Assembly (NCBI GenBank): GCA_047495785.1
Contig: JBLDXI010000017.1
Span: forward strand, 3,162,001 to 3,226,000
DNA length: 64,000 bases
Source: Lepidodermella squamata
Lineage: Eukaryota; Animalia; Gastrotricha
Reading direction: 5' to 3'
A model generated the notes under the pieces. The model had not been told where the DNA came from. It did no database searches and saw only the letters and a program-made list of their open reading frames with translations. Shown here in pieces: positions 5,240-64,000 of this stretch. Every line of letters begins with the position of its first letter. Within the stretch, counting starts at the first letter, position 1. Both the position numbers and the translations under genes were made by a program.

Positions 5240-5250
5240 TTGGCGCCAAA
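5240..5250. promoter_or_regulatory. Candidate E2F-binding site upstream of MCM4
   Basis: Near-palindromic TTGGCGCCAAA (TTTGGCGC on the minus strand) ~380 bp upstream of the MCM4 ATG. MCM genes are classical E2F targets. Confidence 0.45.
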
Positions 5251-5623
5251 CGTGAATATGTTCTTGGAGAAACGAAAGGCGGCAAAAGTTGTGTTGCTCT
5301 TGCATGCTGTCGTCCATGTTTAACCTTTTTGAGCGAAAATTATTTGATTTGTGACACGCGTGAGGTTTTTGAAACTGTCTTTCTCTTTGGCTCTTCCTAA
5401 ACCAACAAAAGAAAAGATCACTGCAAGATCAACAAATCAAACATCGGACAATCAGTATCGGTTTGTGTGATTTGGAGATCCATATAGATCTAATTATGTC
5501 TTATGACATCTTGCCAATTCTCAATTTGTAGTTAAATATCATTTTAAATTATTGCTCAATAATACTTTGCATTAATCATTAATTGCGTTGTATTCTGTAT
5601 GTTTAGGGTTATTATTTTGCTCA

Positions 5624-8555
5624 ATGGAACCTCTCTCTCCCGTCAGTTTTGGCGAATCTAGTGGCGGAGTCGCCTCTTCCACTAAGGCAACTCCGAAATC
5701 AGTCGATGATCGTCCCAAGGCGCGCTCAGCTAGAAGGAACGGTGGTAGAACGCCTTTATCTTCTGTTAACAGCACACCATCCAGGAATCGAGGTGCCAGT
5801 CCAGCTGTTGTATTTGGCAGTCAGCCGGGAACCCCTGCTACTCCAGGAGGCGGACTGCGTTCCCGTCCAGACCTTGGAACTCCCTCTCATGGACTGCGCC
5901 AGGTTCAGGTAGGCTTTATCATGGTAATGTACTCGTAAAATGATCTATCATGCGAATTATAGCTTACTAGTGATTTGGGCGGCACAGATCACTTTGCTGA
6001 AACTAGCGAGGGTGATAATGCTTTCAAGCTAGTGGTATGGGGCAGTGATGTTTCAGCTGAGCGTTGCCGTCGCCAATTCTCCCGGTTTTTACGATCTTAC
6101 GTGCCACCAGCCGTTGACCATGACGAAGCAATTACCCATCAGGAGACTTCAGCCTTGGCTGACTCTTGGGAACCTACCCGGCCTTATTATTTGCGAAAGT
6201 TGCGTGAAGTTTCCGAAGCTAAGGATAAGCCGATTCTGGAGATCAACTGCTCTTTCTTGAAGAACTTTGACGCTCAGCTCTACCGTCAAATGATCATGTT
6301 CCCATCTGAAGTCATCGGCTTCTTGGATGATGCAGCGAATGAGGTTTGTCTATTGCCTTGCAATAAATTGCCCACATCTCGATGAATTCTAGGTGTTTTC
6401 GATTGAATTTCCCGATGTTCAACTCAATCGTCCCATCGAGACCAGACCCTATTTGCCGGCGGACTCTGAGTCAGCTCGAGCTCTTCGTCATCTTGGCCCT
6501 TCAGATGTTGACCAGCTGGTCGTCGTTCGTGGAATGGTCATTAGATTGTCCCCAGTAATTCCAGAAATGCGTTCCGCTTTTTTCCGTTGCTCAATCTGTT
6601 CCAACTCTGTAACAATGGATGTTGACCACGGCAATGTGTCTGAACCCCGGTTGTGCACTAACTGCAACTCGAAGCATTCATTCACTATCATTCACAATCT
6701 GTGCACTTTCTTCGACAAGCAACTCATTCGTCTACAGGTTGCCATTTACAATTCAGTTTCTCCTCTTCTCTAAGTATTTATTTTCAGGAAAGCCCTGATG
6801 ACACGCCTCCCGGCCGCACACCTCACGCTCTTTCGCTGTTTGTCAACGGTGATTTGGTCGATGCAGTCCAACCTGGTGATCGCGTTGCTGTAACTGGTAT
6901 CTACCGTACACAGCCTGTACGCGTCAATGCTCGCATGCAAACACTGAGGGCCGTTTATCGCACCCACATCGACGTCCTGCATTTCCGTCGCGATATTGCT
7001 GGCCGCCTCCCATCATCAAAGCTAACTGAATCAGATGCAAATAGCGGTAACGGAATATGCCCGTCCGGAGCTGATGCAAACGATTTCGTCACTGAATGGG
7101 CTAATCGTCTGTCTCCTGATCGCGTTGCCGAGATGAAGAAGCTGTCAGAGGCCCCTGATGTTTACGAGCGCTTAGCTCACGCCCTTGCTCCCAGTGTTTA
7201 CGAACATGAGGATATTAAGAAGGGTCTGCTTTTGCAGTTGATGGCAGGTGTCCGCAAGGATTTGTCCGGCGTTGGCCGTGGCTTTTCGCGCGCCGATATT
7301 CACGTGATTTTATGTGGAGACCCCGGTACCAGCAAGTCGCAACTTCTGCAGTACGTCCACCGCCTGGCCCCACGCAGTCAATACACCGCTGGTCGCGGCT
7401 CATCCGCCGTCGGTTTGACCGCGTTCATCGCTCGTGAGCCTGACACCCGTCAAACTGTGCTGCAACCCGGAGCCTTGGTCCTTTCCGACCGCGGCGTTTG
7501 CTGCATTGACGAATTCGACAAGATGTCCGAAGCCGCCCGCACCATTCTCCACGAAGTTATGGAACAGCAAACGCTGTCAGTCGCCAAGGCTGGTATCGTT
7601 TGCCAACTCAATGCCCGCGCCGCTGTTCTAGCCGCTTGTAACCCGGTGTCTTCGCGATGGGACCGCACCAAGTCAATCATCGACAACATCCGCATGCCTC
7701 CGACCCTTCTGTCGCGCTTCGACTTGGTATTTTTGATGATCGATCCTCAGGATGAAGTTTTCGACCGCCGTCTCGCCCGCCATTTGATCTCTCTTTTCGG
7801 CCCGGCGCCGAACACAACCCGCGAGCACCAGCTTCACCAAGACGAGAACGAGACCGGCACGGTTAGCATGGACGATTTCGCTCGTTCGTCGGCCTCTCAG
7901 CCTATCGGAGCTAACCAATCCGTGGTCGACAACGACCTCTTGCGTGACTACATCGCCTACGCCAAGGCCAAGTTCGACCCTCTCATCAGCGAGCCTGCTC
8001 AACAGGCGCTGGTCGAAGCTTACGTTCGTATGCGTCAAGGACCTGGCACAGGCGGCCAGGTTGCTGCTTATCCGCGTCAACTGGAAGCGCTGATTCGTTT
8101 GGCCGAGGCTCATGCGCGTCTTCGTTGGTCGCCTTCAGTTGAAACTGTCGATGTTCAGGTTCGTTATTTTGAAGAATTATTTCAATTCGAAATTTAATGA
8201 ATTTTCTACAATTTAGGAGGCTCGTCGCTTGTACGGTGAGGCGTTGAAGCAAGCCGCGACTGACCCTTCGACTGGCAGAATCGATGTTGCCCTGCTAACC
8301 ACCGGATTCTCAGCCGCTGGTCGTAAACGCCGTGCGATGCTTCGCGAGGCAGTTAAGCGCCTGCTGACTGGAATGGGCTCGTCGAGTCGCGAAACCATTT
8401 TCCAGTACGAACCTGTCCTAAATCAACTGCGCGCCCAGTCCGATGTGGCTATCAGCTGGGAAATGTTCGAGGACGCTCTTCGCGATCTTGAGGATGAAGA
8501 TACCATCGCTCTTCCTGGCAACCGCACGATTCGTCTCCTGGTGGCTCGTGCTTGA
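5624..8555 (+). CDS. MCM4: DNA replication licensing factor MCM4 (multi-exon, ~50-nt introns)
   Basis: S/TP-rich N-terminus, VVWGSDV, zinc finger CSIC..CTNC, Walker A GDPGTSKS, Walker B IDEFDKM, arginine finger SRFD, AYPRQLE, and the MCM4-type [10 protein letters not shown] tail. Confidence 0.96.
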
Positions 8556-8855
8556 AAACAGCGCAGAATAACAAACACTAAGTGACAGCGATTCATTTCG
8601 TTTTCCGTAAATCTCTATGATCGTAGTTTTGCTGAATGATGAATTTTAAAATTACGTTTCTTTTATGCCGTTTCTTCTTGGTGTTGCATGCCATTTCATA
8701 GCTTATGATGTAGGCCATTGAAAACAGCCGCATGAATTCTTTAATCGAGTCTTATTATCTCCGGCAAATAAAATTAACACGGAAATTCGTTCAGCATTTT
8801 TGAAAACAATTACATGCATTTTTATTTTCAAATCCAAGCTAAATATAATATATCA

Positions 8856-14141: not shown

Positions 14142-15439
14142 TCATTCGGTATCGAAGCCGCACCGTTCACCGACGAGCCGTTTCTAAATTTCGCAGTAAT
14201 TAAAATAGTTAAAATAACAATTGTATATCAAACCTCGTCGAGCTCCTTCTTTGTTTCCTCTTCGATACGTCGAATGTCGTCTAACGTTAACCCATACCAA
14301 TTATCCATCCAACAAAATATTTGCCGGTGGAATAGAAAGAATATTCTCCTCTCAGCCTATATATGAAAAATACAATTCAGGCGAGACTGGATGCCTGCTG
14401 AAAGCTACAAACGTGTTGGATAAATTTTTCGATTCGATGTTGTAGTCCAAACCATTTGAACTCAGCTGTCACGAGTTTGTATGCGCACATCACAGGTTGA
14501 GTTGTTTCCTGCGTGGACGAAGTGTTAAAATAAAATAGAAGCTAAAAAAATAGCGACACATACCGCCCATTTTCCAACTAGTGGGCCGCGACCAGTCTTC
14601 TCAGATTTAAATTTTTGAGGGTCTTGGTCTTCGCGATAATCCTAAAAAAAACTGCATTGAAGCCAAAGCCGCGGTAATTGGTTTCACTCTTACACTGTGG
14701 CGAACTTCGTCGTTGGCAATGTCGATAGTTATCACTTCACGCTTGGCAAGCAGCTCTGGAGGTAGGTTGTGAGCCTGGTTGGTCCAAAAATTAAACTTCC
14801 TGATTTGATGCAAAGGTATGAAGCTTACATTTTCAGTTGTCCCACGGTCGGGTAAGTGAAGAGATTCAATTTTCATCATGAAGTTCTCCTTCATGTAACC
14901 GGGGTTCTAGAATAAAGGATAATATTGGTGAAAATATTATATGGGCTGAAATGTTTGTTTACCGTTACGACAGTTCGGCAGTAGGGATATACGTTCCATC
15001 CTTCTTCGTGAACTTCCATGGAGCCCTTTGGCATGAAAAACCTCAGGATGGCAGGAATTCGACTATAACATTTGAAAAATCATTAGCTTATTATTCCAAT
15101 GATCAGGAAAGTTGTGTGAACCTTTTCAAATGATATATCTTGTAAGTATGTTGGCCCGAGTCGTAGTTTTGAAAGATGGGAGTATTGGTGAATGGCTCGT
15201 TTGTCACTATTTCGATGCCTTCGCCACCGCCTGTGTGCTGTTTACTGGACTCAGCTAGCGACCATAGCTGACCGATTCGGTACTGAAATGCAGAAATAAA
15301 TTTAAAAAAAAACTGGCAACCTGCACAAAAAAATCACCTCTTCGACAGACATGGGCATAATGATTCGGCTGAAAATCATGGCGTAAGTTATATATTTTAT
15401 TGAAGGGCGACTCTTAACTTACAATTCTTTGATAATCAT
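14142..15439 (-). CDS. Phosphatidylinositol transfer protein, class I (PITP alpha/beta-like)
   Basis: Starts MIIKE; [22 protein letters not shown]-like segment, [49 protein letters not shown]. Confidence 0.92.
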
Positions 15440-23179: not shown

Positions 23180-26100
23180 TCACTGGTGCTGTTTATCCGG
23201 GGAGTAGTGTCCATTCAGCAGGTGCGTTCTGGCACCTTGCTGTCTTTTAGCTTTCGGTGACTGGTGAATTTGAGCAGTCACTGCGACTGGAATTCCGGTC
23301 TTTCCATTCACCAGAGACTCTTTCGACGGAGGATTTACCTGGGCTGGCATTGAAATTCGGCTGATTAGCCCCGGTTTCGAAGAGTTGGAGGATCCAATAC
23401 TAGTACCGTTTGCAGAACTAATCAACGAATTATTAATATAGGCAGGAATGACGTGAATAGATGATTTACCTGCTGCTGGAGGCGCCACTCGAGGCTTTTT
23501 CGCCTTTGGATTGCTTGGCACACTGCGCGACAAGGTCTCTGATCAAATGGTCCTGTTCGTTGATGTGATGACGCATTTCCTACGAAATCGAATACCCACG
23601 CATTTCAATAGCCTATTTTTCAAATTTTTTTAATTTACCGCTATCTTCCCCTCTTTATCATTGAGCAGAGTTTCAGCTTGGCTCAGAGAAGCTAAGATTT
23701 GGCTAGATAGAAGAATAAATGGTAAAAGCGATCTGTTCGAGACTTCAACTTACTCTCTTTCAGACGAAAGCTTAGCAATAGTATGCGCTTGTTCTCTGCA
23801 ATCGTCAGAAAATTAATGAAATTCAGAATAATTTCAGACTCGGAAATCAAACCTCTGACGCTCGTTTGATTTACTCTGGCTAGAAATAACGGCGGATGCT
23901 TCGGCTTTCACTTTATTTTGAGCTTCTCGTTGTTCAGCAGCTAGGGCATCCTTCAACAATTTCACCTCGGAAACCTGCAAAAAATATAAATATAAATGAA
24001 GTTGGGTCCATTTCATTTTTCATTCATTCATTCAATTTATCCTCATTAACTTTGTCATTTTGAAATTATGGGACATAGGAAAATCGAGCAGTTTTCAGTT
24101 CACAAGATCGTAAACATTAGTTTTCTTCATTCATGTGTAACCTGAATTCACGAGTTACGGAATGTCGTAAGCTGTCTGAATGTTTTTCAACTTCCTGCAA
24201 AAACAGCTACTTGAGTGCTCTTTTATTTCACGCACGAGGATTTGTTGCATGGACATTTCCACGAAATAAATTCCCAAACTTGGGGACATGTCGGAGCTCA
24301 AACCATCAAAAAAGTGCAGTTAAGTATAACGAAAAATGAACTGGCAAAAAATGAAGTGTAAAAAACTGCCTTACCGATTGTTCGTATTTGCCTCGTAGGG
24401 TCTCAATCTCGGCTTTCAGAGCGTCGGCTTCAGACAGCGTTTTCGCCAATTTTTGTTCGGTATCGACCAGACGCGATTGCAGCTCTCGAACTTTATCACT
24501 AGAGCCTTTCTGTCCATCCAACTGCGCCTTTAGTGCCGAATTATACTCCTCAGCCTGGCTCAGTTGCGCCCCACTCATCGCGCACTGATCCCGTAGACGG
24601 CTTGTTTCTTGCTGAGCCATGTTCAACTGCCGCGAAAACTCGTTGACCTGAGTCGATAAATCAGCGACGTGATTACGCGTGCGAGCCAGTTCGTTCTGAA
24701 GAATCGCCGTATCCTGCTCTCGTTCTAGAGCTATCGCCTGGGCCGATCTCAAACTCTCGCGAGTTCGATCGAGCTCGGCAATCAACTCAGCGACACGTTT
24801 TTCGAGGATAAGAACACGCTCTCCAACAGTTTGCGCCTCTCTTTCAGCCGAAGAATGAGCCACCTTAGCAGCTCGAAGTTGCGACTCCATCTCACCGAGT
24901 TCGTCCCGAGCCGCCTTAAGTTTAACCTGGCAGTCAGACAAATCTCGCTGCGTCTCCTCAACAACGTGATCTCGAGACGAAATTCGGTTCTGTAATTCTC
25001 GAACTTGCCGCTCAGCGTTTGATAGAGATTCGCGAAGTTCGACTGAAACACGGCGAGACTCGGCGCTGCTGCGACTTGCATCGACATTTTTCGCCCGTTC
25101 TTGTCGCAAATCTTCCTGAAGCTGCTGCAAAATCTGGTCCTGATGAGCTATTTGTTCGGCTGACAGTTTGTGCTGTTCACGAATTCCGGCGGTTTCAACC
25201 TCGGATTTGGCGATTTGCTGCTTCAGTGTTGAATTTTCCTGAGAGACCTTCGCCAGACTTTCACGGCTTTGATTCAATTCGGACTTGAGCCGCTGCAGAT
25301 TTTCGCGTAGGTTAGACCTGTCTTCTTCGCAGTCCTGAATTCGCTCTTGAAGAGACCGCATTTCCGTCTGGAAACGACGAACCTGCCCTTCCAATCGCAC
25401 ACATTCAGCTACTTTAGCGTTCATTTCGTTCTCGCTAACAGCGGCTTTTTCCTCGGCGACCTGAGCCTTTTGCATCGCAGCCGCTTGTTCGCTAGCCGCC
25501 TGTTTGTAGGACTGGCGGGCCTCGGACGCTTCTCGCTTCGCCGATTCAACCTCGTTAAGCATCAACGCGACGCGCTGCTCAGACTCGCGAAGAGCTGACC
25601 TCGTGCTATCCAGGTCAACTCGAAGTTCCTGAACACCGCATTCAAGCCGAGAAATGATGTCCTCGCGTTGATGAAGGTCGCTAGTCAGGGCAGCAATGTC
25701 GATCTCTAGCGCATGGATACGCTCGAGGCAGACGCTATTTTCCTCCTTCATAACCCGTGAATCAGCACTGGTCTCGGCGATTTGTCGCCGCAAGTCTTCC
25801 ATCTCCTTGTCACGAGCCCTGGTATTATTCTCCCATTCCAAATTCTGCTCCTCAGCTTTCTGCCGCATATCACAGAGCCGCTCTTCAAGCATTCGCAACT
25901 CCTCGGTCGCGTTCATTTTCTCCTCCCGAGCGATTTCAAGGTCGTGCTTCATTTGTTCAAGAGCCGCTTCCAGCTGATTTGCCTTACGTTGAGCTGACTC
26001 AGTGTCAATGTTCATTGATTCCAACTGAATCTCTAGTTCTTCGATCTTCTTATCGCGCTCGAGTAGCTCTCGATTAGTGTAACGATGGTCTGTTTCATAG

Positions 26101-29100
26101 CAGCGGAAATCAGCGAGAAGCCGGCTGTAAGATTCTTCAAGGACAGCGTTGTCTTGGCACACCCGTGAAAACTTCTCCTTCAAGTCTTTAGCAACAATTT
26201 CTTCGGCCTGGAGTCGGAATGCGACTGACTCAGCAGCGGAGCGTTCGTTGTCAATCACTTCTTTAAGCTGGATTATTGCGAGTTCAAGCTCTTGCTGCCG
26301 CTGCCGCGAGTTTCGCACATCAATACGGGCCTGTTGCAAGTCAGCTTCCATGCGAATTACAATAGTTTCCAGGTCGGCAACTCGGGATTTCAAATCGCAA
26401 TTCAGCCGATCCAATTCGTCTGACTTTTCATCACTAGTCGCCATTCTGCCCGAAAAATCTGCACATCGCTCTCGGAGGGTTTCCAACTCCATACTGGTGA
26501 GGCGTTCTTCGTCTCGCAGGCGGTTCAAATCTTCAGTAGCGTCGGCTAGTCGTTGTTTCAAATCGCTATTTGCTGCGTTCTGCTCAGAATTCAGCAGGTC
26601 TAACTGCCGACAGCGCGCGTGAAGTTGATGCACCTCAACCTGGAGATCGGAATTCGACCGGCTCAGAGCCATTATCTCTTCTCGGGCATGTTCAAGACGC
26701 TGCGATAGCTCGGAAACATCAGCACGCGCCGCATCTCGTTCGACAACGAGAATGTCTGTAGTCTGCCTAAGGCGAGCCATTTCGCCGTCTTGTTCGGTTC
26801 TCATCAGAAGCGCGTCGCGTTTGATTTGATCAATCAAATTTTCGGTGTTTCTCGCGTCCTGAATAGCCATTTCGCGTTCTTGAGACACCTCGGTTATGCG
26901 GGCCTCAGCGCGGTTAAGCCGCTCCTCCATCAAAGCCAAGTTTTCCAAGGCCTGGCGTAATTCGATCTGCTGTTCCCGGGCGCGTTGAGCTACCCGTCGA
27001 ACATCACCCTCTTTCGTCTCCATTTCTTCGCTGGCAGCCTGGCATCTTGCTATAGCTTGGTCTGTTTCGGCGCGAAGGCGAAGAATAGCCTGGTCTCGGA
27101 CCGCAACATCGTGACGATACGCCTGCAGTTGCTCCTCGAGACACTGAACAGCCATTTCAAGCTCGCCGACCCGAGCCTCACATCTGCGCCGTTCTTTCGC
27201 CTCGATTTCAGCTGATTGGCTGATTTCGAAATTTTCCATCCTAGCATGCTCCTGCGCAGTTCGAATGTCGACGTAATCGCGATCAAGAGCAACGATTTTT
27301 TCGTTCAGTTCGATAACCTCGTTTCTGAGACGAGACGCCTCACTCTCAGCGGCTGCTAGTTGCTGCTCAGCGTACAAACGATCCGAGTCTGACTTGGCGA
27401 CTTGAGTCTCAGCCGCGACAGCTCGAGTCCGTTCATGCTCAGCGTCCATTCGTGCATCGGCCGCTTTTTGCCGCATTTCCGACAACTCCTCAGCCATTCG
27501 TTTCATTGCAGTTTCAGATCTTGCCAGTTCTTGTTTTGCAGACTCAGTGGCCTCGCAGGACCGCTCGAAAGCCGCTCTCATTTCAGCCAGTTGGTTGTCC
27601 CTAACTCTCACGAGTTCACACGTGTTTTCTGCATCTCGTTGAATCGTCAGGAATTCAGCCTCGAACCTAGCTATTTCAGACCGGAGTTGCGAGATTATTC
27701 CATCTTTTTCGCCAACTTGTTCCGATAACATTGCAACTTCATTTCGTAAAGCGCCAGCCTCGTCTTCGCGCTGCTGAAGTAGGGCACTCAGCGATTTATT
27801 GCGCTCGTGGTCGACGGCTTGCGAGTCCAACATTTCGCGCATTTGCTGCTCAGTTCGCAGTTTTTCTTCCCAAACGATGCGCATGTCAGCCCGCATTTTG
27901 TTAGCAGCTTGCTCTTGCGCTCGCAATTCGTCCTTGATGCGATCGACGTGATGTTGCAATGCGGTCTGTTCGGCGGAAGATCTGGCTTTCAAACGAGCGA
28001 ATTCTTCCTCAACAACGATTTTTTCGTGGCGAGTAGTTTCGAGCTGCATTTCCAGCTTCCTCACAGAGTCTGTCAAATCTTGAGTTTTCGTGGCAAGTTC
28101 TTTTGCGAAATAATGCTCCGCTGATACGCCCTGACACGTCTCGCTATCAACGCTGTTGAAGCTATTCGACTGCAAAGCTTTCACCGCATCCAATTGAATA
28201 CTCAGCGATCGCACTTGATCCTCGGCGTTTCTTGCCTTGTCGCGTTGTTCTTTCAACAACGTGGCAATGTGCACAAGTTCTCGGCGCATGTTCTCGACCG
28301 TTTCTTCCTTATCGCCTATGGCAGCACGAAGAGCCTGGTCAAGCTGGGACGAAGACATCTGCCGTTCCGAAAGCAACGATTCCAAACGATCATTCTATGA
28401 AAGACATAAGTAATACAGATCCATTTTCATGTATTTGAGCTTACTTCGGTCATCACTTCTTCGTAGCGAGTTCGATACATCTCTATTTCTTGAGCTCGAT
28501 CTTTAGCCGTGTTTTCGAGATCCTCAGCCCGCTCCCGTTCGTTAGCCAACTCGCGCTGAAGATAAGCTACAGCCGATTCAGACTCACTGTTGATAATGAT
28601 TCGTTCATTCTGAAACTTTTTGAGATCATCGAGAGCCTTAACCGAAAATTTGCATTAGAGAGCGCGAAGCAAGAAACGTTGAAATTACCTTTGTCAGCTG
28701 TTGTTTATAATTTTCGGCTTGAGTTTGCCATTCAAACTTGTCGCGCTCCAACTGCTCAACACGCTGATTGTGAGATTTGGATGGGCTGCTATCTGCGGCC
28801 GCCGATTTCAAGCGACTTATTTCTCGATCTCGACTGTGCAATTCGCGAACAAGTTCTTGTTCTCTCTGGCTAATAGCGCTGAGAGTTGTTCTGACCTCAT
28901 GCAGCTGTAAAAGAAAAACGAAAATATTTAATGGTACTAAATTTTAATTGCTAAATTTAGACCTTTTCATCGAGCTCAACAATGTCTCTTTTAGCTCTCA
29001 TCAGCTCTTCGTCGCTCGTGTGTCGATCATTTTCGATGAAGACTGTAGCAGGCTCGTGGTATTCGCTTTGAACTCCGAGCGATCGTTTCGGCACAGGCGC

Positions 29101-55207: not shown

Positions 55208-55280
55208 AAAGGTTACATAGAAATAAAAAGGAGCGAGTACCGGAGACAGGAAACATGCAAACATATCATGAGGAAAATCA

Positions 55281-56105
55281 CTAATTCAAAAATAATTTAC
55301 CAAAAACTTCGTCATAAATCGATGTGCTGTTACCGTCGCCATAACCATCCCAATACTCGTCGGGATACACGTAAGATTCATTTGACGACGGGCTCAAACA
55401 TGAGTAGTCCGGGATGTCGTAGTAGTATCCATCCGGCGATACAACAGTAATATTCGGACAGGGTACTGTAGTAGACTGTGGGCCAAACGTTACACCATCG
55501 CTATTTTTGGCTGTTGCAGCAGTCAGGGCAGGACCTTGGCTAGCGGTAACTCCTGGAACAGAGCCGCTAACTTTTGATGTAGCTGGTAAGGGCACTAATG
55601 TTGTTAAAGCTGGTAAAGTTGGCAATTGGGGTGTTAGGTTCGGCAAAGTTGGAAGTGGAGGTAAAGTTGGTAAAGTTGGCAGAGGCGAGGTCTGTGGGGG
55701 CTCGGCCGTGGGGAATCCTTCGAGATTTCCCCTTTTCAAAAATGTCCACCTTTTGTTGTAAGTGGGCAAAAGTTGACACTGATCACTTTTCGGCACGCAC
55801 CACTGGCCATTTGGTAGGAAAGCACTGATGCCTACACAATCTGCTCGTTGCAGGCACAATTTCCGACAATCGTACAGCTGTAGAGTGAAAGCTGTAATAT
55901 TCCCACCAGTGCAGTGCTGATGTATATCGACGAAGCCTATTAGAAATGGGCAAATACTAGGTCAACGTCGTACTTTATCAAGGTTTTTACCTGGCAATAT
56001 CACTGTTACTACATCTTCTCGCCAAGTGAAAAGAAGGGTGTCATTCTTACCGAACGCAGCCACACCCAGGAAGAGAAGAGGTAGCGTAAATATGGCAGGA
56101 AGCAT
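55281..56105 (-). CDS. Small secreted protein with one PAN/apple-like 6-Cys domain and a Pro/Thr-rich (LPT)n linker
   Basis: Signal MLPAIFTLPLLFLGVAAF; GFVDIHQHCTGG..DCRKLC..CVGIS..CVPK..C..WTFLKR; LPTLPTLPPLPTLP. Confidence 0.75.
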
Positions 56106-56890
56106 TTTTTGATAATATATATACGGACAGTTTTGGCAGTGAAATGGGGTTTTTTGTTATATATGTGTATATCTAGGTATCCAATTTAGATTGTTAGGCA
56201 AATACCATCTGTCTGGTTGCGACGGTGAGCGACCTTCGGATAACGCTTTTTCTTCGGAATTCTCACGAGCTGCAGCGTAGGTGCGAAAATTCACAGCGCT
56301 GTAACGCTCAAACACAGTCATTTTGTCTTTTATTATTTTGTTTGCTTTTTCTCTCAATAAAAAATGAACATCAACTCGTGGCGCCGCCTTGACACAGAGA
56401 CAATTTTTTGGTAAAATGAATAACAGTAAAACAGTATAGCCGAGTAATGTAACAAGAATAATAAACTATAATAATATGGTATAACTTGTATAAATATAGC
56501 GGGTATGTTTAACGCCATATTTTTTTTATAAATATTTATACGTCTTTTTACATTACAACTTCAGAAATAATGAGGCGATTCTCCAGCAAAAGAGAAATAA
56601 TTATATCTGATGAGTCAGGGCATTGATCAAATCAGCAAGCCGCCCAACCCCGTCTTGGCAATCCTGAACAACCTTGAATATCGGCGGCGAGATGATAGCT
56701 ATGATGAGACGGCGGGACACGAGTGTTATTTCGCGTGTATAAAAAAGACGAGACGGCAACGGAAAATGAGACAACACAAAAGTGATGAGCAATCAAAAAG
56801 TTGTGTTTGAAACACACAGCATGCGATAAGATAGGGTTGTCGTAAAACTGAGAGCTATCCTAATAATCTAACAACGGGCTGAGAGATTCA

Positions 56891-59800
56891 CTAAGACTGC
56901 CGCCGCAGGAAGGTCCAGTCGTCACTTGGGCCCGCCAGTTGGCAGCTTGCGTTCTTCAGGAAGCAGAAGCCAGAGCCACCGAGGCTGATTGAGATTCCAA
57001 CGCACGTTGGCTCGCTGCGGCACGCGGCCTTGCAACGGTCGACGCTGAAGTAGACGAGGGCGGACTCGAGGCTGCCGCCCTTGCAGTGCTGGTGAATGTC
57101 GGCAAAGTCAGACGAGCCCATCCAGCCGCGCTGCACCTCGCTCGGCAAAATCGGGATCGGCACCGGCTTGGTCGTCAGCGTCCAGCCACCCGTATTCGCG
57201 ACTTCCCCGCGCGCTTTCGTGATCAAACTCGCGAGTGGCGCCGACTTCTCATGGCCGATCTTGAACAGATTGCTGAAATCATCCGCTACAGCGCTCATAT
57301 CGTTCGAGTGATGCGGCAAAGTCGACGCTTGCTCGCCGCTGTTCACGAACCGGAAGGCCAGTGATGCCTGCGAATTTTTCGTTGCTGCCGCAGTTGTAGT
57401 CGACGGTTGTTGGGTAGTCGCTAAGTCAAGCTCTTGATCAGCCAGCGGAGGCGTGTGGGAGAAACGCAGCGACATGGTCGCGCCCGGCGACTTGCTATGG
57501 TCTTTACGCAAGAAAGTCCAAGCGTCATTACGGCCACTCGACAGCGAACAGCTCGCACTTTTCGCGAAGCAAGTTTTACTGTCTTTCAGTGAAACAGTGA
57601 TACCGCCGCAACTTTCGCCGGCACTGTCGCACAGCTGCTGGCAGGCGACTAGGTCAAGAACTGCGTCGACATTAAGCGCTCCGCCTCGACAGTGGCGGTG
57701 GGTGTCCGTGTAACCGGGCAGTCGGATCAGCTGAGTCATCAATTGTTGACGGAATAATGCGCTGAATTTGTTGCTAGCATGCGCGACCGAAGATATCGCC
57801 GCATTGACAGCCGCCCTGGCATCGCCCGCCCCGAAACCCGGGCTAGTGGTCGGCTCGTCCGTAGTCGTCAGCGTCGTCGTTGTCGTTGGCGTTGTAGTCG
57901 AGCTGGTAGTCGTTGAAGGCGTTGTAGGCCTTGTTGTTGTGGTAGTGGTGCTAGTCGTAGTAGGCTTGGTGGTCGTCTCGATTTCAGTATAGGCCAAGAC
58001 AACATCGGCGCTATTTTCGTCGTCAGCAGACGGCGGCTTGTTATCATGCGATTTGATGAGGAAAGTCCACTTCTGGTTGATCGGATCCGCTGGCTCGACG
58101 AACCGGCAATCGGCAGCCTTGGGGTAGCATGGGGCCTTGCCACCAGTGGAGACGGTGATGCCGTAACACGCGCTGTGTCGGTTGCATTCGGAAATGCAGT
58201 CGAGCATGTCGTCGTAGTAGTCATCAGCGTCGTGCAGTGATCCGCCCTTGCAGTGCAGGCCTGTCGACAGATAGCCGCTGGGTAGCCACGTCGGCTGTTG
58301 GTCACCGTCACTGCCAAGTACCTTTGTCGCGGCCGCCATCGCCACCTCGTAGATTTCGGACGATGCCAACTCAACCATATGATTCATCTCCGTAGTCGAA
58401 GTAGTCGAGGCCTTTTTGGTCGTAGGCGCCTCAGTCGTGGTGGTGGTCGTCGTTGTCGTCGTTTTCTTGGGGGTTGTAGTTGTTGTAGTTGTCGGTTTCT
58501 CTGTTGTTGCGCTAGTTGTGGTGGACATTGTCGTAGTCGTAGTCGTTGTAGAACTCGAAGTCGTCGTCGCCTCGGTCGAAGTCGTGGTTGGGACAGGTGT
58601 AGATGTTGTGTCGATGAAGAGCAGCGTAGTCGCATCCTCAACTGGCGCTGCAGCTTCTTGAATCACCTTGGGCGAGTGGCGAGTTGCTTCAACGTCTTTG
58701 GCAACTGCAGTAGTCTTGCGAGTAGGAGCTCGGCGTGTCGAAGTTCGGCTCCGGTGAACCAATCGACCAGCACTGATTGGTGGGTGATGGCAGCCGAGAT
58801 CGACAGTCTCGGGGCGACAAGCACAGACCGAAGTGACGAGGGCGTTAGTATCAGGCCATGTTATTAGCGTCTTAGCTTCTTGATACAGACTGGCAGAAGG
58901 GCTTTGGTTCGACCATTCACCGATCTTGACGTAGCCGAACGGGACCGGACTGTGATCCATGCGCCGGTAGACATGATATTCGTACCTATTTTGGAAGAAA
59001 ATTTATTCAAAATAACTTCAAATTTTATTTCAGTCACCTCGCGGGTCCATCGCCGTGATCATCGAAATGGAAATACTGACCAGCTGTGCTGAATCCCTTC
59101 GGAAACTCGAAAGAAATATTCGCAATTATCGCCTGTAGCTTGGCGCCGCGTTGTGTCAGCGACATCAAACGCTCGGGTGAGCAGCGATCGTCACCGCCGG
59201 ACGAACATGCTCGGCTTAGGAACTGGTGGAGGCCATTGGCGGCGGCGTAAATAGCCGTTGACAATAAACCCAAGTGATCCGAAGAAGGGAGATCGTCCGG
59301 TCGCAGCTTGATTGTTGGGTCCAATTCTAAGTTGAAAAGATAGCATTTTTAAAACAATGATAAAGCAAGTGCATATAAACACTTCGAGTCATGCTGATAT
59401 ATAGATACATCAGGCAAACAGAAATGATAATAATTATGCTACAACAATCAGTAGAAGGTAGTAGGAAATTGCTATGCTATAAACTTCAATTTTCTAGTAC
59501 TAAAAAGAAACTCGATTGGAAATGATACTCTAAGATCAAACGATGATTCACTATTTGACTGCCCTGTTAAAATTGAAAATTTTCATCAAGTATAACAAAT
59601 TGATCAATTAAAAAGCAATAAAATAAACAAACTGCATCTTGGCCGGGATGGATCGGCGGCTCTGAAGGTGCATTTGAACTTGTCCTCCCAGAATTCCAGG
59701 AACCATGGATCCGCGTCGGGCTGGAAAGGTGTTTGCGAGGCGAACCAATCGTTGAAGTCGTCGATTTCAGGCGCAGCAGCTCGCAGTGTGATGGCACCGG

Positions 59801-61047
59801 CAGCTACGTCGGTCAAGCCGTCCGGAATCTCGGTGCTCGTGCCCCATGCATCGCCGGCGACGATGACAAACCGCGGCCGGAATTCGCCAACATTTTGCGC
59901 CAAGTCGCGCGACTTCTGTAGTGATGTCATAAGGCCGCGTAAGGTTCCTGATTCGCAGAAACACATGACAGCGGCGGCGGAGGGCGTCTGCTCGAGGTTG
60001 GCGACGATGCGGTCGAAATCACCGGCCACCATGTCGCTGTTAACAGCCGGCGCTTGCGACTCGCTCGCAGTGCAGATGCCAAGTTTTGCTAGGCTGGTCT
60101 TGAGCTCGGTAACACCGTACTCGCCGTACATGCCCTGGCTATAAACGAGATGCACGCATTGCCAGCCGAGCGAGTACGCTAGGCTGGCCATGGCTCGGGC
60201 TTGGTAAATGTCCGACGGCGACGTGCGAGTGTACATTCGGTACCGCCGACGGTCCGACAAGTCACCAGAAGTCGCACCGAAATCGATCTAAAAACAAAAT
60301 TAGTCAAAATTGAATCTACTGAGCTGATCAGAAAAAATTGTTGAAAAAATCAAATATAATTTGTTAATTTTTTTACCTGTGGAATCTTGAATTGCTGTAG
60401 AAGCATGTTCAGTGGCGAGCTTATCCGGCTAAACTCGCTGCCAATAACAACTGCAACAGGTTTCGGCTGCAGTTGCGCTCCGTTTCGCATCATTGTGGCC
60501 GTAATTTTTGTCGTCGCCCATTGCATGGCGCGGACAGTTGCCACTGTCGGCAGGGAACACGCGTCGATGATGTTGTAGCCGAGTTTCACGCCCGGTAAAA
60601 GGTTCGGATTTGCGTTAATCGCTGCGATTGTTCGCCGGAATTGCGAGACCAATAATACTCGAGACGGTACCAAATCGCCGCAAGCATTTCTGTGGAAAGT
60701 GAATAAGCAATTTTTATGCTTGACCACTGAACAGCGAGTTGATTAGTTTAGTTTCCCATGTTATAAAAACTGCATGAAACAAAAAAAAACAAAAAAAAGC
60801 TTCCAAGGCTTTTATAGTTTCAACAAAGCTTGGTTCCCGAACACCAAAGAAAGGTTCAAATTGGCATCTAAGGCCAAGATAATTTGACTTACATCAAGTC
60901 GAAATCTGCTCGCCGCGTTGCGTTCGATTCATGTATGGACATAACAGCGCCGATAATAATGTCACCATCCTTGTACAGCTGATTCGGCTGACAATGTGCC
61001 AGCGAAAGCAGAAGCTGCAAGGGTATAAGCAGAGGCACTGCCTTCAT
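56891..61047 (-). CDS. Secreted metabotropic-glutamate-receptor-like Venus flytrap domain fused to Thr-rich mucin stalks and three PAN/apple-like domains (no 7TM), ~1168 aa
   Basis: Five exons join in frame: 61047-60893, 60689-60377, 60287-59633, 59326-59038, 58985-56891. Motifs GDIIIGA, LLPGVKLG..IIDAC, FKIPQIDFGATS..LSD, YGEYG, CFCE, DPWFLEFWEDKFKC, FDDHGDGPARY, KIGEW, SVC. Confidence 0.88.
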
Positions 61048-64000
61048 GGCTGCTGGCGGGCACGAAGAAGTAGCGATAAGTTGTTTCCAAGTGTTCCGGT
61101 TGTTGAGGTGCAGCTAACGAGTTAAACAATATTGAATGAAGTTAAAATAAATATCATAAAATGCTGGTTAACGCCGTCTAAAAATAACACGCTACAAATT
61201 GACGTGTAGAACAAGCTAAACGGTTGAGTTAATTGAAAAGAATTAAAAATTTCCGTTGTCGGTTTTTGCGGCGCGATACAAGCGAATGCCGTGCTGCTGC
61301 GATGATGGCGCCGGTGATGGCGCCGGTATTTTGTTGTAGGTTCCGAGTTAATCAAGTCGAGGTATTTTTTCTCACCGCGAGCGCGCAACTCAATTAAGCG
61401 CGCGTTACGTATTTGAAGACGCGACAAATTTACCAGAATCGCTCGTCGTGTCTATTATATTAAAACGATGAGCGGCTCTAGTTGTAACAGCATTATAAAA
61501 ATAAAATACTAGTAGTAATAATAATGATAAATGCACAGAAGAAGAATGTATCACTTTCGCGCGCTCAGCAGCAATAATAATGTTAATTGGAGCGACGATG
61601 ATGTAGTTAAAACAAAGCTGGCGATGTACGAGGATGGCTTGCGATGTTAACATTGCTCAATTTTGAGATGCCTAAGCGCGACACGAGTAATGCGAAATTG
61701 GTGTTTGGCGCATTTATTGCCAAGCCGGGCTTTGACGCAAGACGCAAGTGGCGGTATAGAAGTAAGAGATGGTCCGAAATTCCCACAACAAACATAAACA
61801 ACGATAAAACAACAATACCGGCTGTCGAACAGAGTTGCTGCAGGCAGCGCGGTTTCTAATAGCACCACTAATAATAATGGTAGCACAAAAATGTAAGTAG
61901 TTGTTATTTTATACGATTGTACACGCTCGACATACGCCCGACATCACCGAGAGCCATCATCACCTGCCGCCGCAACGACCGCAACGCTGTGTTCAGTGCC
62001 AAAAACCAAGGCAGGCGGCGGCTGTTGCAATTGTTGCGACAGGGCAGAGCGCGCGCGCGTTCTGTGGTGTCATTATAGCTTACTACCAAAACCGCGCTGC
62101 CTTAATAATATCATCATTATTAGGTAGGTTTTGTCCGATGCGCGCATCGCCATTGCGCAGAGTGTTTTGCCGCCACAGCGTTGCACCGGCTAGAGCGGAA
62201 GGCGAACCTCATCGTGAACGCAGCCAAAAAGAACGTATTAGTCGAGCCGTCGAGAGGCTAGATGGTAACAACTAGCGTCAAAACCCTGTGACGCCACTTC
62301 GCTAGCAGTGGACGGCTCAGGTGAGTTGGCGGCGATAACCCCGAAACAACGGCGGCTCACTTTCTGCCGCGCTCGACTAATAGCTCGGCGCTCGAATTAG
62401 CCTTCCTATCTCCTCAGCCTATAACGGGTATCACAGTCGTTCATTCTCGCATTAAGAGGCTATATGAAAGAAAAGCGTCGTTTGTTGAACGTGCGACAGC
62501 TCACCGGTTGCGGCGAAAAACGGCACGTGAAAAAACACCGGCGGAACACCTGGCGGCGGTGGCGGCTTTATTATTTTAAACCCAAACATCGTTGCAAACA
62601 AAGCCGCGCGTTTTGTTATTTTACGCTAAAAAGCGCGACGATGGCGATGCATACGTGAGAAATGGTCGCAAACACGGCCGGGCGATGCCCATTGCCGTTG
62701 CAAATCCGCTGCAATTGTCGACATTATCCGCAAAAATTGACAGGCCGTAACAGTTGCGATGAAAAACGGCAGCGTCCGCGTGAAAAAAATAACATGGAAT
62801 GGTATATCACGGAGACAATAATATTAACGCAAGGCGAGATTGTTGGTGATGAAAGAAAAGCAAGGCGCTTTTTCAATTAACTCGTACGTGTCTTGTGGCG
62901 TGGTCAAGAAAATGTCGCCGTCGCCTTCTTGCCCAGCGAGAGAGCTATCACTGTTGAGTGCATGCGTGCGACGCCATGTTTCTAGGGCAATTCATCGGCT
63001 TTAGCGCCAATGTGACTTGTAATAATATTGTGATTAGCGCTGAAATGTAGCTGTTACAAAACGCGGTGGCATCAGTGCGATCGAGCAATAAACACGGTCT
63101 TGTAAAATAATTCTGACATCGCAGCAGAAGCCGCAAGCGCATCGTTTATGTAACAAAATCACCTCAGTTGACCCCGGCGCGTAAAAAGCGGCACCGCGCG
63201 CTGGCCCCGCCGCCATCGCGCGGGGACACACAGCCGTCGCAATATAAATTAGTAGGCCGTGTCGCACCATATGAGGAAGGTATCAATCGGTTCACACTTT
63301 AAACACGAGGCTCATTAACGGTCTAATCGCACGCAAAACGCTCGCGCTTGTACACAAAATTTTTGCATTGCAAATCGGCGCCCAACAGCTTTAGGTGCAT
63401 TTCGGCTAGGTGCTGCCGGGCCAACGCCTAATATCGGCCAGAAATAATGTGGAACCTATCCGCGACCAAAACTAATAGCGACAAATCAAGCCTGTCGACA
63501 ATTAGTATTCCTTCTTATTTAGACCGAGACTCTTCTCAACTGACCGCATTTTAGGCAAGGTAATAATAAAATCACAATCTATTAAGCAAACATATATATT
63601 GGTAATTAAAACGAAAGGCTAGGGTAATTTGTTGCGTGTTTGGCTTATTGCGGTTTTTCATCTTAAAATTTCATGAGAGGGCGTCTGAAATTAATAAATA
63701 ATGACAATTCGGCTGAAGAAAAGTGATCAGCTAAGGTTAACCCGGCGCGTGCCTCTGAGTGATGCCGAAGCACGCAATATCTCGATTGGAACTCGAAAAA
63801 CAGGTTACACGATTTGTTTACAAGCCGAATAAACGTTGTAATAAGTCAACAGTATGAAATGTTTATTGTTCTCTGGTATATATCAGGTAAAATTTCTCAT
63901 CAAATTTTTTTTACTGTTTATAGCGTCAATTTTCCGTAGATTATTAATACGTTAGCATTTTGTAACATAAGATGAGCACAATTTTATTCAGAAGATATTG

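What the first reader, a model, noticed from the sequence alone, without database searches (positions are those of the whole stretch)
56891..61047. Soluble mGluR-type Venus flytrap domain on a mucin stalk with three PAN/apple-like domains, with no cysteine-rich domain and no 7TM
Seen: a signal peptide and a complete class C GPCR extracellular domain with mGluR hallmarks run to 'W..SVC' (~58825), where mGluRs enter the nine-cysteine domain. Within the same exon (58985-56891) the frame instead continues into Thr-rich tracts and three ~70-aa 6-Cys repeats (HCxGG..C...C...CxGI...CxxK..C..WTFL), then stops. I see no transmembrane segment and no 7TM exons before the next gene, so the fusion does not depend on a splice guess. 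Known: mGluR, CaSR and T1R always couple the flytrap to a 7TM; PAN/apple domains bind proteins or glycans. Inference: a secreted amino-acid-binding sensor, scavenger or decoy tethered to matrix or mucus, an architecture I do not know to have been described.
Basis: partly seen in the sequence, partly recalled or inferred. Interest (0 to 1): 0.9.

Follow-up and report, generated by a model that had tools for sequence, protein, structure and literature searches.

The report
Secreted flytrap-mucin-PAN fusion protein
A small invertebrate has a real, transcribed and conserved gene that joins the ligand-binding "Venus flytrap" head of a metabotropic glutamate receptor to a sugar-coated stalk and three PAN/apple adhesion modules, with no membrane-spanning part, so it most likely works as a matrix-tethered amino-acid binder rather than a receptor.

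Summary
A five-exon minus-strand gene (61047-56891) encodes 1168 aa. It has a signal peptide, a complete mGluR-type flytrap, a three-cysteine stub where the cysteine-rich domain should start, two tracts with over 60% Thr, and three 6-Cys repeats. No transmembrane segment follows the signal peptide.

The repeats are true PAN/apple domains, by profile search, a confident AlphaFold model and fold search. There is no cysteine-rich-domain or 7TM coding anywhere in the 64 kb window.

A relative known only from metagenome contigs has the same architecture. There it lies in one uninterrupted ORF across two of the window's introns, in a syntenic locus. Domains are conserved and linkers are free to vary. 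Within that species there are 15 synonymous and 5 non-synonymous differences, and all five replacements lie in linkers.

cDNA contigs confirm one intron and run through the stop codon.

The five α-amino-acid-contacting residues of mGluRs are kept. Two of the three basic residues that hold glutamate's side chain are replaced, and the third probably is too. The ligand is therefore probably an amino acid but not necessarily glutamate.

Flatworm SmGBP is a 7TM-less mGluR flytrap. I did not find the mucin-PAN fusion in the literature. Function is inferred.

The parts
60893..61047 (-). Exon 1. ATG at 61047-61045, a signal peptide (about residues 1-19) and the start of the flytrap (QPNQLYKDGDIIIGAV...).
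   Evidence: The N-terminus has the highest hydrophobicity in the protein. The mature N-terminus QPNQLYKDGD is identical in the ortholog.
60377..60689 (-). Exon 2. Flytrap lobe 1, including the Ser equivalent to mGluR1 S165 (S139).
   Evidence: Pfam ANF_receptor E 3e-11. mGluR3/7 structures match at E 6e-7. It is 80% identical to the ortholog exon.
59633..60287 (-). Exon 3. Flytrap core with T162, D182, Y210 and D302, equivalent to mGluR1 T188, D208, Y236 and D318.
   Evidence: ANF_receptor E 1e-22. mGluR1/5 structures match at E 1e-34, with a residue-by-residue alignment.
59038..59326 (-). Exon 4. Flytrap lobe 1/2 return strands. The position of mGluR1 K409 is His here and Gln in the ortholog.
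   Evidence: ANF_receptor E 0.04. The intron before it (59327-59632) is confirmed by a cDNA joint with CT..AC ends.
56891..58985 (-). Exon 5, one open frame. It holds the end of the flytrap, the Cys stub, linker, mucin 1, PAN1, mucin 2, PAN2, linker, PAN3 and the stop codon (56893-56891).
   Evidence: cDNA contigs have depth in every bin from 56444 to 59030, and one contig (56371-57110) runs through the stop codon. The ortholog has the same content in one ORF.
58790..58825 (-). Three-cysteine stub (SVCACRPETVDLGC, C525/C527/C536) at the point where mGluRs enter the cysteine-rich domain. It is probably retained to pair with the lobe-2 cysteine (C228).
   Evidence: Conserved in the ortholog as SVCPCVPEPVDEVFGC. 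There is no NCD3G hit. The disulfide partner is my inference from mGluR structures.
58388..58609 (-). Mucin-like tract 1 (residues 597-670; 61% Thr, 12% Ser).
   Evidence: Composition is. The ortholog is also Thr-rich here but the sequence is not conserved.
58043..58297 (-). PAN/apple domain 1 (residues 701-785).
   Evidence: It is 55% identical to the ortholog's PAN1.
57842..57982 (-). Mucin-like tract 2 (residues 806-852; 64% Thr).
57494..57742 (-). PAN/apple domain 2 (residues 886-968). It is preceded by a conserved segment, FSALFRQQLMTQLIRLPGY.
   Evidence: The segment plus the domain is 68% identical to the ortholog.
56894..57127 (-). PAN/apple domain 3 (residues 1091-1168), the C-terminus of the protein.
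   Evidence: AlphaFold model pLDDT 87.6. Fold matches are plasminogen PAN Z 8.7 and TgMIC4 apple-5 Z 8.2, TM 0.60/0.66. It is 73% identical to the ortholog.
56371..56890 (-). 3' untranslated region, at least to 56371.
   Evidence: The cDNA contig 56371-57110 ends in adapter-like letters. An AATAAA lies at 56333.

Best explanation
This is a functional gene for a secreted, non-membrane protein made of three kinds of module.

(1) An mGluR-derived Venus flytrap that still has the pocket residues contacting the α-amino and α-carboxyl groups of a free amino acid.
(2) Two Thr-rich, presumably O-glycosylated mucin spacers.
(3) Three PAN/apple modules, a fold that elsewhere binds glycans or proteins.

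Shown:
- The architecture is real and the gene is transcribed.
- It has no CRD, no 7TM and no other membrane anchor.
- It is conserved in a second species in a syntenic locus, and both the flytrap and the PAN domains are under purifying selection.

Inferred:
- The PAN modules fix the protein to an extracellular matrix, mucus or cell-surface glycocalyx, and the mucin stalks hold the flytrap away from it.
- The flytrap closes on an L-amino acid or a close analogue.
- The ligand is probably not glutamate bound in the canonical way, because two of the basic residues that hold glutamate's γ-carboxylate are replaced (R323, K409) and a third probably is (R78).
- Having no transducing domain, it acts by binding alone. 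It buffers, scavenges or concentrates the ligand at a surface, or hands it to membrane receptors. This is what flatworm SmGBP is proposed to do and what AChBP does for acetylcholine.
For: Gene model and 1168-aa product.

Flytrap identity.

Pocket residues: S139, T162, D182, Y210 and D302 match mGluR1 S165, T188, D208, Y236 and D318. R323 is Ser and K409 is His (Gln in the ortholog).

The four intradomain Cys pairs of mGluR flytraps are present (the pairing is from my knowledge of mGluR structures).

No TM, and no 7TM or CRD signal in the window or in the ortholog contig.

PAN identity:
- The repeat profile hits 278 proteins, and the top ones carry Pfam PAN_1/PAN_4 at the matched places.
- The model has pLDDT 87.6.
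- All top fold matches are PAN/apple. They include the galactose-binding apple domain of Sarcocystis SML-2, solved with thio-galactose. They also include TgMIC4 apple-5, which is galactose-binding from my own knowledge.

Ortholog:
- It has the same architecture in one ORF across window introns 3 and 4.
- The downstream PAN gene, IP_trans and a Fez1-like gene are syntenic.
- Non-synonymous differences per site are 0.18-0.31 in the domains and 0.5-0.6 in the linkers, with synonymous sites saturated.
- Among haplotypes of the relative there are 15 synonymous and 5 non-synonymous differences, and all five lie in linker or mucin.

Transcription: a cDNA joint removes intron 3 exactly, there is depth across exon 5, and one contig runs through the stop codon.
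Against: - No ligand binding, glycosylation, secretion or localisation was measured.
- The RNA evidence comes from short assembled contigs of a run whose RNA nature is a guess. My support for that guess is the adapter-like loose ends and the spliced joints.
- One joint in that output was not shown, so a minor alternative splice out of exon 5 cannot be excluded.
- The R78 equivalence rests on an ungapped extension of an alignment.
- PAN domains bind many kinds of partners, so 'matrix tether' is only the most common use.
- Only two species are known to carry the gene.
Confidence: 0.55

Rival explanations
1. It is an accessory or dominant-negative subunit. The free flytrap pairs through its lobe-1 face with the flytraps of membrane receptors and tunes them. 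Candidate partners are canonical mGluRs or the flytrap receptor tyrosine kinases reported elsewhere in this genome. The PAN/mucin tail localises the complex.
For: Class C flytraps work as dimers (established knowledge). SmGBP forms a stable non-covalent dimer and is membrane-associated without a TM (PMC3206071). The flytrap is the best-conserved part of the protein.
Against: The loop cysteine that links mGluR protomers covalently is absent. No partner has been identified. Conservation of the pocket residues fits simple ligand binding equally well.
Confidence: 0.2
2. It is mainly a structural or adhesive matrix protein, as mucin plus PAN proteins usually are. The flytrap has been re-used as a binding module for something other than a free amino acid, or merely as a bulky head.
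For: More than half of the protein is mucin, linker and PAN. The glutamate side-chain-binding basic residues are lost. A neighbouring gene encodes a small secreted PAN protein with a Pro/Thr-rich tail, a typical matrix design.
Against: All five backbone-contacting pocket residues are identical in both species, despite saturated synonymous divergence.
Confidence: 0.17
3. It is a gene-model artefact. The real product is an ordinary mGluR whose CRD and 7TM exons lie elsewhere, or the region is misassembled.
For: Only that one joint in the read-laying output was not listed and that the window ends 2.9 kb upstream of the gene.
Against: The relative has the same flytrap-to-PAN3 reading frame as a single ORF in four independently assembled contigs. 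No 7TM or CRD signal occurs in the 56.9 kb downstream of the gene in the window, or in the ortholog contig. A cDNA contig runs through the stop codon, and DNA contigs from a 2024 run match without any difference.
Confidence: 0.03
4. It is a decaying remnant of an mGluR gene (a pseudogene) that happens to stay open.
For: None beyond the loss of the 7TM.
Against: The 1168-codon frame is open in two deeply diverged species. Conservation is domain-specific. Polymorphism is 15 synonymous to 5 non-synonymous with no replacements in the domains. The gene is transcribed and spliced.
Confidence: 0.01

Closest known systems
SmGBP / SjGBP / planarian truncated mGluRs (Taman & Ribeiro 2011, PMC3206071)
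   Same: Both are gene-encoded mGluR-type flytraps with an N-terminal hydrophobic leader, conserved Ser/Thr/Tyr/Asp pocket residues, and no CRD, 7TM or tail. SmGBP binds glutamate in vitro and sits on the worm surface.
   Different: SmGBP is about 488 aa and ends after the flytrap. It keeps the Arg68 equivalent and has no mucin or PAN modules. Its membrane attachment is unexplained, whereas here a dedicated tethering module is fused on.
Metabotropic glutamate receptors (class C GPCRs)
   Same: The flytrap is clearly of the mGluR branch (E 1e-34 against 1e-9 for CaSR/T1R). It has the same intradomain cysteines and the same α-amino-acid contact residues.
   Different: There is no cysteine-rich domain beyond a 3-Cys stub, no 7TM and no intersubunit loop cysteine. 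The positions of R323 and K409, and probably R78, are not basic.
Venus kinase receptors, and the flytrap kinases noted elsewhere in this genome
   Same: Both show that invertebrates re-use class-C-like flytraps on other chassis. VKR flytraps are activated by amino acids (PMC2680970 title and abstract).
   Different: Those receptors have a TM helix and a tyrosine kinase. This protein has neither.
Acetylcholine-binding protein of molluscs (my own knowledge, not tested here)
   Same: The logic is the same: the ligand-binding ectodomain of a neurotransmitter receptor released as a soluble protein that acts by sequestering ligand.
   Different: AChBP has an unrelated fold (Cys-loop receptor ectodomain) and no tethering modules.
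PAN/apple adhesins and matrix proteins. Solved examples matched here: TgMIC4 apple-5, Sarcocystis SML-2 lectin, plasminogen and HGF N domains, factor XI apple. From my own knowledge: PAN-plus-mucin apical matrix proteins such as C. elegans LET-653.
   Same: The fold is the same (Z 7-8.7 over 70 of 78 residues) and so is the 6-Cys pattern. Use in tandem with Ser/Thr-rich spacers is also shared.
   Different: None of these carries a flytrap. The repeats here fall below Pfam's thresholds on their own and form a distinct HCxGG...WTF subfamily.

Membership tests
Class C GPCR / metabotropic glutamate receptor | N-terminal Venus flytrap (Pfam ANF_receptor) of the mGluR type | tested here: met
   Pfam E 1e-22, 3e-11 and 0.04 on exons 3, 2 and 4. 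mGluR1/5 structures match at E 1e-34.
Class C GPCR / metabotropic glutamate receptor | Nine-cysteine domain (NCD3G) after the flytrap | tested here: not met
   No NCD3G hit at E<=1 on exon 5. Only three Cys (525, 527, 536) precede the linker and mucin.
Class C GPCR / metabotropic glutamate receptor | Seven-transmembrane domain (7tm_3) | tested here: not met
   No hydrophobic segment after the signal peptide. No 7TM-like cluster or class-C motif in any frame of the window or of the ortholog contig. No Pfam hit in the ORFs I scanned.
α-amino-acid-binding class C flytraps | Pocket residues equivalent to mGluR1 S165, T188, D208, Y236 and D318 | tested here: met
   S139, T162, D182, Y210 and D302 by alignment to solved mGluR1/3. 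They are identical in the ortholog.
Glutamate-specific mGluR pocket | Basic residues for the γ-carboxylate (mGluR1 R78, R323, K409) | tested here: not met
   R323 is Ser in both species. K409 is His in the window and Gln in the ortholog. R78 aligns to Leu by ungapped extension, and an Arg lies three residues upstream, so this last point is uncertain.
PAN/apple domain superfamily | Sequence relationship to Pfam PAN models | tested here: met
   Alone, the repeats are sub-threshold (PAN_4 E 0.016; none at E<=1 on the whole exon). The repeat profile retrieves PAN_1/PAN_4 proteins at E 1e-42 to 1e-20 with overlapping coordinates, and 14 of 20 aligned family members hit PAN_4.
PAN/apple domain superfamily | A helix packed on an antiparallel sheet and held by conserved disulfides, about 70-80 aa | tested here: met
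   The model has pLDDT 87.6 with strand-strand-helix-four strands. Matches are plasminogen PAN Z 8.7 and rmsd 2.3 Å over 70 residues, and TgMIC4 apple-5 Z 8.2. All the highest-ranked rows, and nearly all rows listed, are PAN/apple or related PAN-like folds. Atlas PAN clusters match at TM 0.69-0.75. Six Cys are invariant in 20 sequences.
Mucin-like O-glycosylated spacer | Long Thr/Ser/Pro-rich low-complexity tract in a secreted protein | tested here: met
   Tracts of 74 and 47 aa with 61-64% Thr. Actual glycosylation is not testable with these tools.
SmGBP-type truncated mGluR | Flytrap-only product of a dedicated gene, with no CRD or 7TM | tested here: inconclusive
   It shares the loss of CRD and 7TM, but carries about 640 extra residues.
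Venus kinase receptor | Single TM helix and a tyrosine kinase domain after the flytrap | tested here: not met
   No TM and no kinase hit.

The most novel reading that the evidence does not exclude
A lineage of small invertebrates has turned a neurotransmitter-receptor head into an extracellular, matrix-anchored amino-acid sensor or buffer. The flytrap, held on glycosylated stalks by PAN lectin modules at a sensory, feeding or reproductive surface, captures a specific free amino acid. It either shapes the local ligand concentration seen by membrane flytrap receptors (GPCRs or the flytrap kinases of the same genome) or docks onto them as a ligand-loaded subunit. That would be a tethered, class-C counterpart of AChBP and a new way of building chemosensory perireceptor proteins.
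Probability: 0.25. Interest if true: 0.8.

Novelty: new variant of a known kind. Interest (0 to 1): 0.62.

Why it matters
Class C flytraps are textbook examples of a sensor wired to a 7TM or, in VKRs, to a kinase. A flytrap with intact amino-acid contact residues has been kept under selection for a long time on a purely extracellular mucin/PAN chassis. This shows that the module is also used without any transducer.

It extends the single described precedent (flatworm SmGBP) to another lineage. It also offers an explanation for how such proteins stay at a surface.

The protein gives a compact, soluble, naturally 7TM-free mGluR-type flytrap. That could be used to ask which ligand it binds and whether free flytraps modulate membrane receptors. 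The lineage in question appears to shuffle this domain unusually often.

Tried and rejected
- Word-indexed searches for more relatives found only the one metagenomic species. These used the exon-5 C-terminal half, the ortholog flytrap and exon 2.
- Two scans of JGI metagenome contigs, with exon-2 and PAN3 patterns, found none. The known range is therefore two species.
- The ESM Atlas feature search gave only generic ANF_receptor clusters.
- Exon 4 alone gave no PDB sequence hit, and one mis-framed reference was corrected.
- Earlier-findings look-ups by sequence and by several word sets were blank.
- I did not model the whole flytrap. The spliced protein has no single reference, I did not type long sequences, and no deep alignment was at hand.
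- A hydrophobic stretch in the 3' UTR (minus strand, from 56465) could have been a hidden TM exon. I rejected this because it lies after the in-frame stop, inside an unspliced cDNA contig, in AT-rich sequence, and the ortholog has no counterpart.
- The cDNA depth spike at 60623-60821 coincides with an A-rich run in intron 1. I take it for poly(A)-like mismapping.
- I tried to name the organism from a neighbouring conserved gene of the relative. This only showed bacterial-like look-alikes, so the taxon stays open. Another agent guessed a rotifer (unchecked).
Full report
**What is there**

On the minus strand I rebuilt a five-exon gene from the raw sequence. The exons are 61047-60893, 60689-60377, 60287-59633, 59326-59038 and 58985-56891. 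The four GT..AG introns are 203, 89, 306 and 52 nt long. The CDS is 3507 nt, giving 1168 aa.

The product begins with a hydrophobic leader, MKAVPLLIPLQLLLSLAHC. This is the only stretch approaching membrane-helix hydrophobicity, and nothing after it exceeds 1.15 on a 19-residue Kyte-Doolittle window.

**The flytrap**

Pfam ANF_receptor covers exons 2-4, profile positions 9-341 of 353. Exon 3 alone matches solved mGluR1 and mGluR5 ectodomains at E about 1e-34. CaSR and T1R3 reach only about 1e-9, so 'mGluR-type' is correct.

I read the pocket residues off the printed alignments.

| mGluR1 residue | Role | Window protein |
|---|---|---|
| S165 | contacts ligand backbone | S139 |
| T188 | contacts ligand backbone | T162 |
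| D208 | contacts ligand backbone | D182 |
| Y236 | contacts ligand backbone | Y210 |
| D318 | contacts ligand backbone | D302 |
| R323 | holds γ-carboxylate | Ser |
| K409 | holds γ-carboxylate | His (Gln in the relative) |
| R78 | holds γ-carboxylate | Leu (ungapped extension only) |

- All five residues that contact the α-amino and α-carboxyl groups are kept.
- R78 aligns with Leu only if the alignment is extended without gaps, and an Arg lies three residues upstream. This last point is uncertain.
- The pairs of cysteines that form the intradomain disulfides of mGluR flytraps are present (positions; the pairing is from my knowledge of mGluR structures).
- The loop cysteine that links mGluR protomers covalently is absent.

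My reading is that the pocket is built for an α-amino acid, but not for glutamate bound in the canonical way.

**After the flytrap**

The 'SVC' cysteine is C525, whose codon starts at 58825. mGluRs go on here into the nine-cysteine domain. This frame has only SVCACRPETVDLGC and then continues as follows:

- a basic linker
- a 74-aa tract with 61% Thr
- repeat 1
- a 47-aa tract with 64% Thr
- repeat 2
- a 120-aa linker
- repeat 3
- a stop codon

Pfam finds no NCD3G and no 7tm_3.

**The repeats are PAN/apple domains**

- The three repeats and a fourth copy in the next gene match each other at E 1e-10 to 1e-13 inside the window.
- They share the motif HC-x-GG ... C-x3-C-x5-C-x-G-I ... C-x2-K-x3-C ... 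WTFL.
- Pfam does not call them on the whole exon. PAN3 alone reaches PAN_4 only at E 0.016.
- A profile of the four copies, run against 1.84 billion representative proteins, gave 278 hits at E<=0.001.
- The best hits are multi-repeat proteins in which Pfam calls PAN_1/PAN_4 at the matched coordinates.
- Of 20 aligned family members, 14 hit PAN_4 and 12 hit PAN_1.
- An AlphaFold model of PAN3, built with that alignment, is confident (pLDDT 87.6). It has two short strands, a helix and four strands.
- Foldseek's highest-ranked PDB rows, and nearly all rows listed, are PAN/apple or related PAN-like folds. They include TgMIC4 apple-5 (TM 0.60/0.66), the galactose-binding Sarcocystis lectin SML-2, factor XI apple domains, and the HGF and plasminogen N domains.
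- The structural aligner gives Z 8.7 (rmsd 2.3 Å over 70 of 78 residues) to plasminogen PAN and Z 8.2 to TgMIC4 apple-5.
- ESM Atlas neighbours are PAN_1/PAN_4 clusters at TM 0.69-0.75.

**Is a 7TM hidden elsewhere?**

I scanned all six frames of the window for hydrophobic 19-mers and for class-C signatures: FNEAK-type and PKxY-type motifs, and cysteine-rich runs. There is no motif hit anywhere. There is no cluster of hydrophobic segments on the minus strand in the 56.9 kb downstream of the stop.

Seven other ORFs of 130 aa or more, on both strands, carry unrelated Pfam families or none. The stretch from about 30 to 54 kb holds mostly plus-strand ORFs.

**Independent confirmation from a relative**

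A search with the C-terminal half of exon 5 found one protein, P0001. It is 960 aa, 48% identical and carries ANF_receptor. It comes from a metagenome scaffold.

I rebuilt its full gene on L001 as 5245-5396, 5465-5777 and 5838-8816, giving 1147 aa. It keeps the counterparts of window introns 1 and 2. It has no introns at the positions of window introns 3 and 4, so a prokaryotic gene caller read it straight through. The sequence across those junctions matches my splice model (...PRCKLDPTIKL... and ...GDGPARYEYHVYRR...).

The order of parts is identical: leader, flytrap, SVCxC...GC stub, Thr-rich tract, PAN1, spacer, PAN2 with its conserved preceding segment, linker, PAN3, stop. There is again no hydrophobic segment and no 7TM signal on the contig.

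The locus is orthologous:
- The small single-PAN gene lies downstream in both species.
- A PITP gene (IP_trans) and a long Fez1-like gene are nearby in both.

Each PAN repeat is closer to its counterpart in the other species (55%, 68% and 73% over the stretches compared) than to its neighbours (27-44%). The triplication therefore predates the split.

**Selection**

Between the two species synonymous sites are saturated (pS about 0.85). Non-synonymous differences per site are shown below.

| Region | Non-synonymous differences per site |
|---|---|
| Flytrap | 0.21 |
| PAN1 | 0.31 |
| PAN2 (with preceding segment) | 0.26 |
| PAN3 | 0.18 |
| Linkers and mucin tracts | 0.49-0.59 |

The relative was assembled four times, from samples in at least two assembly sets, and the contigs are 98.8-99.4% identical.

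- L001 and L002 differ by 15 synonymous and 5 non-synonymous substitutions and one in-frame 3-nt indel.
- All five replacements lie in the linker or mucin region (residues 545-654).
- None lies in the flytrap or the PAN domains.
- Taking about a quarter of sites as synonymous (my rough figure), that is a ratio near 0.1.

The gene is under purifying selection, and both ends of the fusion are constrained.

**Transcription**

Two public runs hold the stretch. I laid both on 55250-61200, which is 5951 letters and within the operators' limit.

- X2, from 2024, is DNA-like and matches without differences over long pieces.
- X1, from 2015, is listed only as 'RNA?'.
- X1's loose ends look like cDNA-synthesis adapter sequence (my recognition, not a tool result).
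- X1 has a joint that removes 59327-59632 exactly, with CT..AC ends. That is GT..AG on the minus strand.
- X1's depth is zero in the bin inside that intron.
- Two X1 loose ends fit a 54-nt intron in the neighbouring gene.
- X1 has depth in every bin of exon 5, and one contig runs from 57110 through the stop codon to 56371.

No joint leaving exon 5 is listed, but one joint was not shown. These are assembled contigs, so they cannot prove a single full-length transcript.

**How it most likely works**

Shown: a secreted-type leader, an intact flytrap with an amino-acid pocket, mucin-like spacers, three PAN/apple modules, no anchor, conservation and transcription.

Inferred: the PAN modules bind glycans or proteins of an extracellular matrix, mucus or glycocalyx. 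The glycosylated stalks project the flytrap, and the flytrap binds a free amino acid or analogue. With no transducer, the protein acts by binding, as a buffer, scavenger, concentrator or ligand-presenting accessory. I put this at 0.55.

| Rival | Probability |
|---|---|
| Accessory or dominant-negative partner of membrane flytrap receptors | 0.20 |
| Mainly structural or adhesive protein with a re-purposed head | 0.17 |
| Gene-model artefact | 0.03 |
| Pseudogene | 0.01 |

**Comparison with what is known**

Taman & Ribeiro (PMC3206071) cloned SmGBP from Schistosoma mansoni. Its features:
- It is a 488-aa mGluR-type flytrap without CRD, 7TM or tail.
- It binds glutamate.
- It forms a non-covalent dimer.
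- It is tightly membrane-associated on the male tegument.
- Homologues exist in S. japonicum and a planarian.

The authors thought it might be unique to flatworms. They also cite a truncated human mGluR3 splice form.

Venus kinase receptors show another re-use of the module.

What I did not find is a flytrap fused to mucin and PAN modules:
- No paper in the searchable library holds both 'Venus flytrap' and 'PAN domain'.
- The only paper with both Pfam names is an unrelated sea-anemone proteome survey.
- Among the 150 best PAN-profile hits, only the ortholog has a flytrap.

I therefore file this as a new variant of a known kind, the 7TM-less mGluR flytrap protein. It is not categorically new.

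**Limits**

- The organism is not identified. It is a small invertebrate with a compact genome, and another agent guessed a rotifer (unchecked).
- Only two species are known to carry the gene.
- The relation to SmGBP was not tested.
- No whole-flytrap model was made.
- All functional statements are inferences.

Noticed in passing
window 55281-56105, minus strand: The next gene downstream encodes a small secreted protein. It has a signal peptide (MLPAIFTLPLLFLGVAAFG), one PAN/apple domain of the same HCxGG...WTF subfamily, a Pro/Thr-rich (TLPTLPPLP) tract and a Tyr/Asp-rich tail. cDNA loose ends at 55938 and 55990 fit a 54-nt intron. The same gene (P0011, 253 aa) lies downstream of the ortholog in the relative. 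It may be the source of the PAN modules in the fusion, or a partner.
   Followed up: partly
window 14186-15400 and 24306-28385; L001 13188-14866; L005 1937-3579 and 9650-11239: A phosphatidylinositol-transfer-protein gene and a long Fez1/coiled-coil gene lie near the flytrap-PAN gene in both species, but at different distances and orientations. Synteny is conserved with local rearrangement.
   Followed up: partly
L002 2772-3923, minus strand (relative's contig): An intron-less 383-aa NAD-dependent epimerase/GDP-mannose-dehydratase-like ORF. Its nearest ESM Atlas clusters are all bacterial (score 0.95-0.97). It may be a horizontally acquired gene in the relative's genome, but feature similarity alone does not show that.
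   Followed up: no
window 56160-56465, minus strand: A 102-codon open frame in the 3' UTR and intergenic AT-rich stretch begins with a very hydrophobic 19-mer (FIILVTLLGYTVLLLFILP). It lies after the in-frame stop and partly inside the unspliced cDNA contig (56371-57110). I take it for chance.
   Followed up: partly
window 60623-60821: cDNA-contig depth jumps to about 120, against about 8 nearby, over an A-rich run in intron 1. One contig continues into 188 unrelated letters at 60765. This is probably poly(A)-like mismapping rather than an intronic RNA.
   Followed up: no
window 57743-57826, minus strand (residues about 858-885): A conserved, probably helical segment (FSALFRQQLMTQLIRLPGY) precedes PAN2 in both species. 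It is as conserved as the domain itself and its role is unknown.
   Followed up: no
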